A DNA stretch of 57,120 nt from Saccostrea cucullata (lineage: Eukaryota): positions 62,001 through 119,120 of the forward strand of contig NW_026940607.1 of NCBI RefSeq assembly GCF_032062105.1, written 5' to 3'. Of this stretch, positions 4,424 through 27,520 are shown in pieces. Below the pieces are notes generated by a model. The model worked only from the letters and a program-made list of their open reading frames with translations. It ran no database searches and was not told where the DNA came from. Positions within the stretch are counted from its first letter, which is position 1. Every line of letters starts with the position of its first letter. The translations under genes and the position numbers were made by a program.

Positions 4424-4629
4424 TCCTTATGATCTGTCTCAGTTTCACGCCCTTTAATCACTATAAAAGAAAAAGATTTCAAGCACATCGGTGATTTCGA
4501 AACTAAAGTCAAGCTGGCGGCCAATAAGCTAGCGGCCAATAACAAAAATGTTTTATAACGTTTATCGACTATATTTAAGTGTTTATCGAACCCGATGTAA
4601 AAACACTCATTAATTAATTAAAGTATGGC

Positions 4630-7485
4630 CCCAAAACTAGGAATTGTGCCACTTAGGGGAGCCCGGATAACTTCGGCGCAAGAGCGCCTCTAACAGTTTC
4701 AAGTGTCAAAAAGGACCCAATTGACACCGTTTCTAGGCGCCAGGGCGCAAAATTTACCCCTATAATTTTATACTATAGAGATACTATACCGGTCTAGAGA
4801 AAGCGCCCAGCGCCCAAACTAGGAATTGTGCCACTTAGGGGAACCCGGATAACTACGGCGCAAGAGCGCCTCTAACGGTTTCAAGTGTCAAAAAGGACCC
4901 AATTTACACCGTTTCTAGGCGCCAAGACGCCAAGTTTACCCCTATTATGTGATATTATACAAATACTATACAGGTCTAGAGAAAGCGCCTTGCGCCTAAA
5001 CTAGGAATTGTGCCACTTAGGGAAGTCCAGAACACTACGGCGCAAGAGCGCCTCTAACAGTTTTGAGTGTCAAAAAGGACCCAATTGATACCGTTTCTAG
5101 GCGCCAAGGCGCTAAATTTACCCCTATAATATGATACTATACAGATACTATAAAGGTCTAGAGAAAGCGCCAAGCGCCAAAATTAGGAATTGTGCCACCT
5201 AGGGGAGCCAAAAACACTGTGGCACAAGAGCGCCTCTAACGGTTTCACGTGGCAAAAAGGTCCCAATTTACACTGTTTCTAGGCGCCAAGGCTACCCCTA
5301 TTATGTGATATTATACGAATACTATACAGGACTAGAGAAAGCGCCTTGCGCCTAAACTATGAATTGTGCCACTTAGGGAAGTCCAGAACACTACGGCGCA
5401 AGAGCGCCTCTAACGGTTTCAAGTGTCAAAAAGGATCCAATTGACACCGTTTCTAGGCGCCAAGGCGCCAAGTTTACCCCTATTATGTGATATTATACAA
5501 ATACTATACAGGTCTAGAGAAAGCGCCTTGCGCCTAAACTAGGTATTGTGCCACTTAAGGAAGTCCAGTACACTACGGCGCAAGAGCGCCTTTAACGGTT
5601 TCAAGTGTCAAAAAGGACCCAATTGACACCGTTTCCAGGCGCCAAGGCGCTTAATTTACCCCTTTAATATGATACTATACAGATACTATAAAGGTCTAGA
5701 GAAAGCGCCAAGCGCCCAAATTAGGAATTGTGCCACCTAGGGGAGCCAAAAACACTGTGGCGCAAGAGCGCCTCTAACGTTTCAAGTGTCAAAAAGGACC
5801 CAATTTACACCGTTTCTAGCCGCCAGGGCGCCAAGTTAACCCCTATATTGTGATATTATACAGATACTATATCGATCTAGAGAAAGCGCCTTGCGCCTAA
5901 ACTAGGTATAGTGCCACTTCGGAAAAACCGGAATATTACGGCGCATGAGCGCTTCTAGCGTTTTCAAGTGTCAAAAAGGACCCAATTGACACGTTTCTAG
6001 GCGCCAGGGCGCTAAATTTACACCTATAATGTGATATTATAGAGATACTATACCGGTCTAGAGAAAGCGCACAGCGCCCAAACTAGGAATTGTGCCACTT
6101 AGGGAAGTCCAAAACACTACGGCGCAAGAGCGCCTCTAACGGTTTCAAGTGTCAAAAAGGACCCAATTGACACCGTTTCTAGGCGCCAGGGCGCTTAATT
6201 TACCCCTATAATATGATATTATACAGATACTATACCGGTCTAGAGAAAGCGCCCAGCGCCCAAACTAGGAATTGTGCCACTTAGGGGAGCCAAAAACACT
6301 GTGGCGCAAGAGCGCCTCTAACGGTTTCAAGTGTCAGAAAGGACCTAATTGACACCGTTTCTAGGCGCCAGGGCGCCAAATTTACCCCAATAAAGTGATA
6401 TTATACAGATACTATACCGGTCTAGAGAAAGCGTTCAGCGCCCAAACTAGGAATTGTGCCACTAAGGGAAGTCCTGATAACTACTGTGAAAGAGCGCTTC
6501 TAACGGTTCAAGTGTTTAAAAGGACCCAATTGACTGCGTTTCTAGGCGCCAGGGCACCAAATTTACCACTATAATGTCATACTATACAGATACTATACCG
6601 GTCTAAAGAAAGCGCAGAGCGGCTTACTAGAAATTGTACCTTTTAGGGGAGCCCGGATAACTACGGCGCAAGAGCGCCTCTAACCGTTTCAAGTGTCAGA
6701 AAGGACCCAATTGACATCTTCTCTAGGCGCCAGGATGCCAAGGTACAGGTACTATACCGGTCTAGAGAAAGCGCCCAGCGCCCAAACTAGGAATTGTGCT
6801 ACTAAGGGAAGTCCGGATAACTACGGTGCAAGAGCGCTTCTAACGGTTTCAAGTGTCAAAAGGACACAATTGACACCGTTTCTAGGCGCCAGGGCGCTTA
6901 ATTTACCCCTATAATATGATACTATACAGATACTATAAAGGTCTAGAGAAAGCGCCCAAACTAGGAATTGTGCCACATAGGGAAGTCCAGAACACTACGG
7001 CGCAAGAGCGCCTCTAACGGTTTCAAGTGTCAAAAAGGACCCCATTGACTCCGTTTCTAGGCGCCAGGGCGCCAAGTTTACCCCTATAATGTGACATAGA
7101 GATAAAATACCGGTCTGGAGAAAGTGCCTTGCGCCCAAACTAGGAATTGTCCCACTTAGGGAAATCCGGAACACTATGGGGGCAAGAGCGCCTCTAACGG
7201 TTTTCAAGTGTCAAAAAGTACCCAATTTACACCGTTTTTAGGCGCCAGAGCGCCAAATTTACCCCTGTAACGTGATACTATACAGATACTATACAGGTCT
7301 GGAGAAAGCGCCCAGCGCCAAAACTAGGAATGGTGCCATTTAAGGATGCCCGGATCACCATGGTGCAGGAGCGCCTCTAACAGTTTCCAGTGTCAAAAAA
7401 GACCCATGCAATGGACACCGTTTCTAAGCCCCAACGAGCCAAGTTTACCCCTATTAAATTTGATACTATAAAGGTCTAGAAAAAT
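4630..7485 (+). repeat. Tandem array of ~16 x 182-bp units (left subterminal array)
   Basis: Marker ctaggaattgtgcc or a variant at 4637, 4819, 5001, 5183, 5357, 5539, 5721, 5902, 6083, 6265, 6447, 6627, 6787, 6961, 7140, 7324. Confidence 0.97.
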
Positions 7486-8349
7486 GCTATGCTAATGCTT
7501 TTATTTGCCTTTTCTTAAAATATATTTCTGATTACATGTATTTTCCCGTATGCTCGTATAATATGATGAACTACATTGATGAACTTTGAAGAAATTTCCT
7601 GAGTAAATGAACATATCTTTGTAAAATTAATGACTTTTTGTGACCATTTAGAATTTTCAGAACCTGGAAACCTGACTACCTTAAATCAAAGTATACCGAT
7701 GGACTTTTCGGCATGACGTAATTATGGTGTTCGGCAAGTTGATGAATTGACGCCATCTTTATTTTATTTGCTCATTTATGTTTTATGACCTACAGGAAAC
7801 ATTGGTTTACATTGTACTGCTGAACATAGAATACATTTTTTTTAATTTTTTTTTCCTTTTTGTGTTGATCGTACTGTTATTTTGTCACTGATTCTCAAAT
7901 TATAGTCTCAATTCGCTTTAAATAATGTACCGTGTTTTAAGTAATATAATATTTCTAATAAATTTTATTTTCTGCCAGCCATATGAACCATTGTTGGTTG
8001 TTGATTAAAATACAACAATTGTTTGTTGTAACTTGAATGATTGTCTTAGGCGAAAATCGCATTTTATAGCAGAAATCGATATTTACGTTCCTGTCGCCGA
8101 TCGTAGTGTAGTTTTTATTTTAAACCAAAAAGAATTTTTAAATCACTTACATATCTTTTTCTTAGTAAGATTGTCCTACATTTGAGTTATATTTTCTGAA
8201 TATCACACCCTTCACACATATGTGGGGCACAAATTTTTAAAAATTTTAATAAAATAATAAAAATTTTGATGTCACCGCAAAATTATTACTTTTCTATTTG
8301 GAAATTCAAAAGGTCTTGATGGATTGCTGAACTGACTCAATAAGATTAA

Positions 8350-26053: not shown

Positions 26054-26780
26054 GCGCCAGGCGCCCTCTCTAGACCCCTATAGTACATAGATGTATCAGA
26101 GAATAGGCTTGGATTTGGCGCCCTGGCGCCCAGAAACGGTGTAAATTGGGTCCCTTTTGAGACCGGAAATCAACAGGGGCGCCTTCGAGCCCCAGTATCT
26201 CGGGCTCCCCTAAGTGGCACAATTCCTAGTTTGGGCGCCAGGCGCCCTCTCTAGACCCCTATAGTACATAGATGTATCAGAGAATAGGCTTGGATTTGGC
26301 GCCCTGGCGCCCAGAAACGGTGTAAATTGGGTCCCTTTTGAGACCGGAAATCAACAGGGGCGCCTTCGAGCCCCAGTATCTCGGGCTCCCCTAAGTGGCA
26401 CAATTCCTAGTTTGGGCGCCAGGCGCCCTCTCTAGACCCCTATAGTACATAGATGTATCAGAGAATAGGCTTGGATTTGGCGCCCTGGCGCCCAGAAACG
26501 GTGTAAATTGGGTCCCTTTCGAGACCGGAAATCAACAGGGCGCCTTCGAGCCCCAGTATCTCGGGCTCCCCTAAGTGGCACAATTCCTAGTTTGGGCGCC
26601 AGGCGCCCTCTCTAGACCCCTATAGTACATAGATGTATCAGAGAATAGGCTTGGATTTGGCGCCCTGGCGCCCAGAAACGGTGTAAATTGGGTCCCTTTT
26701 GAGACCGGAAATCAACAGGGGCGCCTTCGAGCCCCAGTATCTCGGGCTCCCCTAAGTGGCACAATTCCTAGTTTGGGCGC
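26054..26780 (-). repeat. Four near-identical 181-bp units (right subterminal array, inverted relative to 4630-7485)
   Basis: aattcctag at 26221, 26402, 26582, 26763. Only one substitution and one 1-bp deletion seen (unit 3). Confidence 0.97.
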
Positions 26781-27520
26781 TATGCTTTAATTAATTAATC
26801 ATAGATATTGCGTCGGGTTCGATAAACACATTTTTCTAGTCGATAAACTTAAAATTTATAAATATTTCGTTATTGGCCGCTAGCTTGACTTAGGTGATTT
26901 CGAATTGTCAAAAATGTGTGGTGTAAGATGACAAAGAACATGCTATTTAATCATGTTTTAGTAATCAAAAGAGCAGTTGTTCTCTAATTATATAAGTATA
27001 ATCAATAGAAAGCGAAATCTTACTGGCAAATGTTAAATCTCACGGACAAATCTGATCAAATATACTGAGAGGCGATGATAAGGGTAAACAGGTCTGAATT
27101 TTCCATAGTTCCATAAAATATTTTGAAATGTCTTGCTGCGAATGCTTTGGATTTCTTACCGTGATATTTAATGGGTTTTTTTCAGTTTTTGTTTCGATTC
27201 CAAGATAATGCGCCTTGATTTCAGCCACACTCAAGACTTGAAAAAGAGGAAAAAATTTGTAATTTTGTTAACTTATCTACTCCAAACGTTGATACATTGA
27301 AGACTTATGGTGAATAATTACTGAAGACTGTTAACTGAAATTCTCTTCTCGGTAGTATAATTGGCGCATTTTAGCGGGGGATATTTTACCAGTGATTATT
27401 TTAACGGTACCTGTAATCCTTGTCGGAATGCAATATGCGGAGTATGACGTTATAAATGTTTTTCATGGGGGACCAGCCTTTTTGCGATAAGCGGGGTGGC
27501 ATTATTACGGGAGACCACTA

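What the first reader, a model, noticed from the sequence alone, without database searches (positions are those of the whole stretch)
4502..26895. 22.4-kb giant foldback-type transposon whose termini are inverted satellite arrays
Seen: two ~182-bp tandem arrays 18.6 kb apart are homologous and face each other. Each is capped by the same ~130-bp unique outer inverted repeat, and the whole unit is flanked by a gatttcgaa direct repeat. So the two 'satellites' are ends of one insertion. Known: a 9-bp TSD with long modular TIRs is the signature of MULE/Foldback elements such as Drosophila FB. Inference: this is a large, possibly undescribed bivalve foldback family that disperses a satellite and moves a multi-kb interior with no recognisable transposase. 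The 182-bp unit is far longer than typical FB subrepeats and close to one nucleosome repeat.
Basis: partly seen in the sequence, partly recalled or inferred. Interest (0 to 1): 0.78.

Follow-up and report, generated by a model that had tools for sequence, protein, structure and literature searches.

The report
Oyster foldback transposon with satellite arms
This 22.4-kb stretch is one inserted copy of a low-copy, non-coding "foldback" jumping-DNA family whose two ends carry opposed runs of a 182-base repeat; flies and nematodes have the same design, so it is a new mollusc example, not a new kind.

Summary
Window 4502-26895 is a single insertion. It has a 132-bp cap and 15.6 copies of a 182-bp unit on the left, and 4 inverted copies plus a 115-bp cap on the right. 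It is flanked by the 9-bp duplication GATTTCGAA. Nineteen paralogues of the host repeat read straight through the site with one copy of that 9-mer.

The assembly (1.17 Gb) holds only about 27 such termini, and every terminus whose inner flank I hold runs into this satellite. A second pair, 19 kb apart on contig C12509, has its own 9-bp duplication.

No interior ORF of 70 aa or more matches Pfam. MULE transposase genes exist elsewhere in the genome, but none lies on a contig that carries a cap.

Much of the 18.6-kb interior is probable or shown nested repeats. One is a 7.3-kb Tc1/mariner-type element that is precisely absent from the closest sister copy. About 4 kb of interior is shared with other copies.

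The two arms belong to different satellite subfamilies (about 69% identity). A sister copy on C9761 has the same make-up, so this is the family's design and not a chance pairing.

The closest known elements are Tetris (Drosophila virilis), FB and Tm1. Superfamily assignment (probably Mutator) rests on the duplication length alone. This scan has already noted other foldback families with satellite arms in the same genome. Verdict: a new member of a known kind.

The parts
4493..4501 (.). Left copy of the 9-bp target-site duplication, GATTTCGAA
   Evidence: Paralogues of the host repeat carry one copy only.
4502..4633 (+). Left cap, type A1. The terminus is ACTAAAGTC, followed by two 15-bp subterminal repeats, TTTATCGA boxes and a TTAATTAATTAAAG box.
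   Evidence: Positions 5-17 are invariant and 18-26 nearly so in 18 termini of types A1, A2 and B.
4634..7484 (+). Left arm array: about 15.6 copies of the 182-bp unit, subfamily Sat-I (old and heterogeneous, partly with a 363-bp dimer period)
   Evidence: 4634-7470; homology runs to 7484; 82% identity within the array, 69% to the right arm.
7886..13129 (.). Pieces of an unrelated repeat (contiguous over 2.5 kb on C4047). Here it is interrupted at about 8350-9882 and by a young repeat of about 920 bp at 11696-12618. Probably a nested insertion.
   Evidence: The pieces are colinear on C4047, C9744, C441, C16897 and C4203, none of which carries a cap. The 920-bp repeat is 96-98% identical to at least 14 other copies.
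14088..18185 (.). Family interior, non-coding. Segments 14088-14370, 14695-15289, 16027-16848 and 17173-18185 recur inside other cap-bearing contigs. 15380-17323 overlaps a high-copy repeat with 21/89-bp tandem repeats.
   Evidence: C12509, C21902, C15643, C11581, C9717, C9761, C20360; C1856; no Pfam match.
18186..25486 (.). Nested 7.3-kb non-autonomous Tc1/mariner/pogo-type element with 28-bp inverted ends beginning TA-CAGT and a TA duplication
   Evidence: inverted ends. (at least 10 other copies at 88-96%). It is precisely absent from sister copies: on C9761, window 18185 and window 25491 lie 6 nt apart; L009 joins 18019-18130 to 25484-25904.
25491..26038 (.). Inner domain next to the right arm, shared with other copies
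   Evidence: C9761 88%, C7129 87%, C20360 84%, C11530 83%, C8126 85%, C21902 78%, C12509 75%, C1856 75%. Positions 25763-25962 are also part of another high-copy repeat.
26054..26780 (-). Right arm array: 4 copies of the 181-bp unit, subfamily Sat-II (young, 99% within the array, 94-98% to arrays on other contigs)
26781..26895 (-). Right cap, type B. The terminus reads ACCTAAGTC; the family consensus is GCCTAAGTC.
   Evidence: (92-95% to B caps on C15643, C20522, C4699, C12509, C11581).
26896..26904 (.). Right copy of the 9-bp target-site duplication, GATTTCGAA

Best explanation
Window 4502-26895 is one copy of a low-copy, non-autonomous, foldback-type cut-and-paste DNA transposon family.

Each end has three parts: a 115-145-bp cap with a conserved terminal core of about 25 nt, internal boxes, and then an array of a 181/182-bp satellite of variable length (0.7 to about 15 kb). 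The two arms face each other around a non-coding middle.

Inferred mechanism: a transposase supplied in trans recognises the caps, excises the whole unit, and reinserts it with a 9-bp staggered cut. That stagger points to the Mutator/MULE group. Every transposition therefore seeds two new satellite arrays, which then grow, shrink and homogenise locally.

Shown here: single insertion, 9-bp duplication, conserved termini, family membership, lack of coding capacity, nested insertions, shared interior.

Inferred only: trans-mobilisation, the Mutator assignment, and any role of the repeats in transposase binding.
For: 1. Single insertion. There is a 9-bp duplication, and in 19 host-repeat paralogues the two flanks abut with a gap of 0-5 nt; the eleven printed read through one such 9-mer.
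2. Family. 27 termini match the 22-nt core at 2 mismatches or fewer, against 0 for the reversed control. In all fetched loci that hold the inner side, except the C11530 and C8126 variants, the cap runs into the same satellite. The terminal core and boxes are conserved across 18 ends.
3. Second pair. On C12509 (19132 to 38150, 19 kb) the ends face each other and carry their own 9-bp duplication, CATGCGCTT. Further inverted pairs by coordinates only: C15643 (30 kb) and opposed arrays on C19034 and C13088.
4. Shared interior. Segments recur in seven other cap-bearing contigs and C9717.
5. Same design in a sister copy. C9761 reads A1 cap, Sat-I array, interior, inverted Sat-II array, in the same order as here.
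6. No coding capacity. No Pfam match for 10 interior ORFs of 70 aa or more, and no Rfam match.
7. Possible partners in trans. MULE-domain genes with open frames of 900-1130 aa exist in the genome.
8. Published parallels. The same architecture and an 8-10-bp duplication are described for Tetris (PMC4079207). A 9-bp duplication with asymmetric terminal motifs is described for Tm1, which encodes a MULE transposase (PMC3169594).
Against: - No autonomous copy was found. All termini seen go with arrays, and none of the 96 MULE (PF10551) or 114 scored PF20700 matches lies on a cap-bearing contig. The superfamily therefore rests on duplication length only.
- Only two pairs could be checked for duplications. 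The third pair with sequence (C3570, about 0.95 kb) has none and is instead flanked by a 315-bp direct repeat.
- The arms of this copy are only about 69-78% alike, so it would fold back poorly.
- Whether the nested insertions came before or after the transposition is unknown, so the size of the moved unit is uncertain.
Confidence: 0.85

Rival explanations
1. Composite transposition ('macrotransposon'). Two separate elements lay near each other, one with an A1 cap and Sat-I array and one with a B cap and Sat-II array. Their outer ends were used together, carrying ordinary genomic DNA between them, as FB pairs do in Drosophila.
For: The arms belong to different satellite subfamilies (about 69% identity) and the caps are only 77% alike. 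Much of the interior is unrelated repeats.
Against: C9761 has the same order of A1 cap, Sat-I array, shared interior and inverted Sat-II array, with the interior 88-91% identical right up to 15 bp from the right array. Both arms are therefore natively joined to this interior. Interior segments also recur in the Sat-II lineage copies.
Confidence: 0.08
2. It is a foldback-type transposon of a superfamily other than Mutator, for example Merlin or hAT-like, or an undescribed transposase.
For: No MULE transposase is linked to the family. Foldback architecture has arisen in several superfamilies, for example Galileo in the P superfamily (cited in PMC4079207).
Against: A 9-bp duplication in two independent copies is the usual Mutator size and not that of P (7-8), hAT (8), Tc1/mariner (2), CACTA (3) or Kolobok (4); those sizes come from established knowledge. 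Tm1 and FB, which have the same design, are Mutator-related (PMC3169594).
Confidence: 0.3
3. Helitron/Helentron-type satellite carrier, the kind published for oysters, or an inverted segmental duplication or assembly artefact.
For: Published accounts of oyster satellite dispersal are dominated by Helitron/Helentron elements with central tandem repeats (PMC7492417, PMC11136912).
Against: The element has a target-site duplication, inverted identical termini and opposed arrays. Helitrons make no duplication and carry one array in one orientation. The exact 9-bp duplication and the contiguous empty sites in paralogues are not expected from a misassembly or an inverted duplication.
Confidence: 0.03

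Closest known systems
Tetris foldback transposon of Drosophila virilis (PMC4079207)
   Same: Outer terminal domain, then about 220-bp tandem repeats, then an inner domain, around a variable non-coding middle. Duplications are 8-10 bp. Only a few complete copies exist and no autonomous partner was found. The arm repeat also forms kb-size satellite-like arrays.
   Different: A different phylum, and no sequence relation was tested. Here the two arms carry diverged satellite subfamilies and distinct cap types (A and B). Elements reach 19-30 kb. No MITE partner like DAIBAM was seen.
Drosophila FB and nematode Tm1, the Mutator/Foldback elements (PMC3169594)
   Same: Composite inverted ends built of tandem repeats of variable number. 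9-bp duplications. Asymmetric outermost motifs at the two ends: Tm1 has A1/A2; here ACTAAAGTC against GCCTAAGTC. Many non-coding derivatives.
   Different: Tm1 and FB subrepeats are 13-31 bp, not 182 bp. Tm1 has a member that encodes a MULE transposase; none was found here.
Galileo, a foldback-like member of the P superfamily (cited in PMC4079207; PMC3573991)
   Same: Long, internally repetitive inverted ends. Large structural variation and chimeric copies.
   Different: Galileo makes 7-bp duplications and encodes a P-type transposase. This family makes 9-bp duplications.
Oyster Helentron/Helitron satellite carriers (Cg_HINE, pearl, CvA; PMC7492417, PMC11136912)
   Same: Mobile elements that scatter short satellite arrays of about 160-180-bp units through oyster genomes.
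   Different: Those carry one central array between unlike 5' and 3' boxes and make no duplication. This family has opposed arrays at both ends, inverted termini and a 9-bp duplication.
Other foldback families noted by this scan in the same genome (s1-700973 with 170-bp arms, s1-707092 with 120-bp arms and 9-bp TSD, s1-710974 with 193-bp arms)
   Same: The same design in the same genome. One has the same 9-bp duplication and a similar copy number of about 15 loci.
   Different: The unit lengths differ. These notes were not checked by me.

Membership tests
Foldback-type TIR transposon (structural class) | Long inverted arms made of internal tandem repeats behind a short unique terminal domain | tested here: met
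Foldback-type TIR transposon (structural class) | Target-site duplication at independent insertions, and an empty site | tested here: met
   9 bp in the window and in the C12509 pair. Empty sites in 19 paralogues. The C3570 pair has none.
Foldback-type TIR transposon (structural class) | Dispersed copies with conserved termini and a variable, usually non-coding middle | tested here: met
Mutator/MULE superfamily (including MULE-NOF/Foldback) | 8-11-bp (typically 9-bp) target-site duplication | tested here: met
   (two pairs, 9 bp each).
Mutator/MULE superfamily (including MULE-NOF/Foldback) | An autonomous member with the same termini that encodes a MULE DDE transposase | tested here: not met
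   No PF10551 or PF20700 match on any cap-bearing contig. No terminus seen without an array. These searches score only the best candidates, so absence is not proven.
Helitron/Helentron satellite carriers of bivalves | No target-site duplication, unlike 5' and 3' ends, and a single central array | tested here: not met
   9-bp duplication, inverted termini and opposed arrays.
P superfamily foldback (Galileo) | 7-bp duplication and a THAP/P-type transposase | tested here: not met
   The duplication is 9 bp. No transposase is present.
Tetris family (D. virilis) | Sequence homology of the terminal domain or repeat to Tetris/DAIBAM | not testable with these tools
   No Tetris sequence was on hand. 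Only the architecture was compared (PMC4079207).

The most novel reading that the evidence does not exclude
In this oyster, foldback-type TIR transposons are a second, independent engine of satellite-DNA birth and dispersal, alongside the published Helitron/Helentron carriers. Their arms behave as exchangeable modules. Elements with arms only about 69% alike (Sat-I against Sat-II) and with different cap types still transpose, so only the terminal core of about 25 nt and the boxes would be needed. Arrays would be free to diverge, be swapped between copies, and seed stand-alone arrays of up to 15 kb.
Probability: 0.3. Interest if true: 0.55.

Novelty: new member of a known kind. Interest (0 to 1): 0.38.

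Why it matters
Published work on oyster satellite DNA credits its scattered, short-array organisation almost wholly to Helitron/Helentron elements (PMC7492417, PMC11136912). This family shows a cut-and-paste route in a mollusc that plants two opposed arrays at each insertion.

It has two further uses. It gives a clean case, with a target-site duplication and empty sites, for annotating 10-30-kb 'unknown' repeats in bivalve assemblies. It also explains some contig breaks and inverted-repeat structures that could promote inversions.

It is not a new principle. Tetris, FB, Galileo and Tm1 already show the design, and this scan has flagged sister families in the same genome.

Tried and rejected
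1. Autonomous partner. Pfam on 10 interior ORFs gave nothing. Whole-genome searches for PF10551 and PF20700 gave many hits, none on cap-bearing contigs. A Mutator-like ORF in the window itself (45924-46634) has no cap-like motif near it.
2. Cap motif inside the monomers, on the idea of secondary transposase-binding sites as in Galileo and Tetris. The subterminal motif recurs nowhere in the arrays at 2 of 12 or 3 of 15 mismatches. Rejected.
3. Monomer hairpin structure. The single-strand fold has z = -1.9, which is not remarkable. Only one short palindrome lies around the GGCGCC site.
4. 'Pogo-like host'. No support was found.
6. Letters from the genome. I did not try fetch from genomes.
7. Scripts. 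The script machine was lost, so the consensus monomers, a monomer tree and the sub-period test were not done.
8. Published sequence. 16-nt words of the monomer and cap occur in no held paper. No supplement text is held for the oyster satellitome paper.
9. An exact-protein look-up to name the organism gave nothing.
10. Rfam gave no match in 4000-27500.
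Full report
**What is there**

Tandem Repeats Finder finds a 182-bp array at 4634-7470 (about 15.6 units, 83-85% matches, partly with a 363-bp dimer period). It finds a 181-bp array at 26054-26780 (4.0 units, 99% matches). The two arrays are inverted relative to each other at 72-79% complementarity.

Outside each array lies a non-repetitive cap, at 4502-4633 and at 26781-26895. 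The caps align in inverted orientation at about 77%, and the left one carries an extra 15-bp internal duplication.

The flanks read ...GGTGATTTCGAA|ACTAAAGTC... on the left and ...GACTTAGGT|GATTTCGAATTG... on the right.

**It is one insertion**

The host sequence is itself a repeat with more than 1,400 candidate copies. In the paralogues, matches to the left and right flanks overlap by 11 nt. In 19 fetched paralogues the two flanks abut with a gap of 0-5 nt, and the eleven printed read ...cggtgatttcgaa|ttgccaaaaatg... with one copy of the 9-mer or a near variant.

**Termini and duplication length**

Aligning the outward ends of 18 caps from 14 contigs gives two terminus types. Type A begins ACTAAAGTC and type B begins GCCTAAGTC. 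Both continue into the core AAGTCAAGCTAGCGGCCAATAA (first 13 nt invariant, the rest nearly so), then two TTTATCGA boxes and a TTAATTAATTAAAG box, and then the first monomer.

With these termini the window's element is 4502-26895 and the duplication is 9 bp, GATTTCGAA. The 2-3 extra matching bases are the element's own last bases.

The pair on C12509 has an A end at 19132 and a B end at 38150, 19 kb apart. It has its own 9-bp duplication, CATGCGCTT.

A 0.95-kb A/B pair on C3570 has no duplication and sits between 315-bp direct repeats (98%). It is a rearranged copy, not a simple insertion.

**Family size**

The 22-nt core, at 2 mismatches or fewer, occurs 27 times in the 1.17-Gb assembly (14 forward, 13 reverse). 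The reversed control gives 0. Several of these are allelic or duplicate contigs with flanks 99-100% identical, so the true number of loci is perhaps 12-20.

In every fetched locus that holds the inner side, the cap runs into the same satellite, except two variant loci (C11530, C8126).

The satellite itself is modest in amount. Each subfamily gives about 120-125 candidate places. The longest array seen is about 14.6 kb, on C21919. Some contigs carry arrays without a detected cap.

**Two satellite subfamilies and a mixed-arm design**

A pairwise identity matrix of 172 monomers separates two subfamilies.

| Subfamily | Identity within | Where found |
|---|---|---|
| Sat-I | 69-87% | Window left arm; C21919, C14276, C22131, C20360/C7129/C9761, C17253/C4525 |
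| Sat-II | 85-99% | Window right arm; all arrays next to A2 and B caps |

The two subfamilies are 60-70% alike. The window's copy therefore has unlike arms.

This is not a one-off. On C9761 the order is as follows:
- a truncated A1 cap (98% identical over the 60 nt that remain);
- a Sat-I array at 19980-21753;
- interior at 21803-24143, 88-91% identical to window 17125-18185 plus 25491-26038;
- an inverted Sat-II array from 24168 to at least 28383.

In the Sat-II lineage (C12509, C21902, C1856, C15643, C11581) the same interior segments lie the other way round relative to the A and B cap types. Caps and arms have therefore been reshuffled between lineages. I infer recombination or conversion between arms or copies, but I could not resolve the events.

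**Interior**

No ORF of 70 aa or more in 7400-26100 matches Pfam at E of 0.1 or below, and there is no Rfam match. Much of the 18.6 kb is other repeats.

- 18186-25486 is a 7.3-kb element with 28-bp inverted ends that begin TA-CAGT, and a TA duplication. It has at least 10 copies elsewhere. It is precisely absent from C9761, where window 18185 and 25491 lie 6 nt apart, and from C1856.
- 7886-13129 is a different repeat that is contiguous on C4047. Here it is interrupted twice, once by a 920-bp repeat 96-98% identical to at least 14 other copies.

The family's own interior covers at least 14088-15289 (in part), 16027-16848, 17173-18185 and 25491-26038.

The unit that moved therefore held a multi-kb non-coding middle. 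The figure of 22.4 kb is inflated by nesting whose timing is unknown.

**Mechanism**

Conserved inverted termini, 9-bp duplications and the lack of coding capacity point to a non-autonomous cut-and-paste element mobilised in trans.

A 9-bp duplication is the usual size for Mutator-like elements. FB and Tm1, which share the design, are Mutator-related, and Tm1 also has asymmetric outermost motifs (PMC3169594). Tetris was assigned to Mutator on the same argument (PMC4079207).

MULE-domain genes with open frames of 900-1130 aa are present in the genome. PF20700 'Mutator-like' genes are very abundant (1,464 candidates, many with 686-689-aa open frames). None lies on a cap-bearing contig, and no terminus was seen without an array. 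The partner is therefore unknown, and the superfamily assignment is an inference at about 0.55-0.6.

The cap's subterminal motif does not recur in the monomers, so I have no evidence that the repeats bind the transposase.

**Comparison and novelty**

The design matches Tetris almost point for point: outer domain, about 220-bp repeats, inner domain, non-coding middle, 8-10-bp duplications, few complete copies, no autonomous partner, and repeats that also form satellite-like arrays (PMC4079207). It is not a Helitron/Helentron carrier, which is the kind published for oyster satellites (PMC7492417, PMC11136912). Those elements make no duplication and hold a single central array.

I found no paper in the held library that describes a foldback element with satellite arms in a mollusc.

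Earlier notes of this scan report other foldback families with 120-, 170- and 193-bp satellite arms in this same genome, one of them with 9-bp duplications. One note calls the genome a hooded oyster. I did not check those notes.

**Limits**

There is therefore no allele-level or assembly-level check.
Several pairs are known by coordinates only, and I did not try another tool for them.
- The script machine was lost.

Noticed in passing
own genome, e.g. C4853:1296-18202, C8789:13-24816, C11481:21251-26496: PF20700 'Mutator-like transposase' genes are extremely abundant: 1,464 candidates, many with intact 686-689-aa open frames and near-identical scores. On several contigs they sit in head-to-tail runs about 4.1 kb apart.
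   Followed up: no
window 45924-46637 (+): A 237-aa ORF matches the C-terminal half of PF20700 (Mutator-like transposase, E 1.4e-24), 19 kb right of the element. No cap-like motif lies near it.
   Followed up: partly
window 29909-33345 (+) and 51550-53565 (+): A Ty3/gypsy-type retrotransposon (gag, RT, RNase H, integrase in ORFs of 336 and 708 aa) and a hAT-type transposase (DUF4371 plus the hAT dimerisation domain). The whole window is transposon-rich.
   Followed up: partly
L010 (C14276), L012 (C22131), L024/L025 (C17253/C4525), outer flanks: In these loci the A1 cap abuts a different tandem repeat of about 168-bp period. This may be one of the other satellite or foldback families of this genome, that is, one satellite-bearing element inserted into another.
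   Followed up: no
L008 = C3570:144882-148009, element at about 1499-2460: A minimal A/B foldback of about 0.95 kb (3 monomers facing 1) has no target-site duplication. It is flanked by 315-bp direct repeats, 98% identical.
   Followed up: partly
L015 (C19034) vs L022 (C11619); L017 (C4699) vs L018 (C12509): These contig pairs have 99.7-99.9% identical flanks, so they are probably two haplotypes. Their arrays differ: about 4.9 units and then unrelated sequence in L015, against at least 7 units in L022.
   Followed up: partly
window 11696-12618, ORF 11848-12471 (-): A young repeat of about 920 bp (96-98% identical to at least 14 other copies) holds a 207-aa ORF with no Pfam match.
   Followed up: partly
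window 18186-25486: A 7.3-kb non-coding element with TA-CAGT ends and subterminal 22-25-bp repeats. It has at least 10 copies, and a 400-bp inverted-repeat element is nested at 21061-21468.
   Followed up: partly
L011 (C11530) and L026 (C8126): These loci hold the inner part of the cap and homologous upstream sequence, but no recognisable terminus and little or no array. They are a variant or ancestral form of the end region.
   Followed up: no
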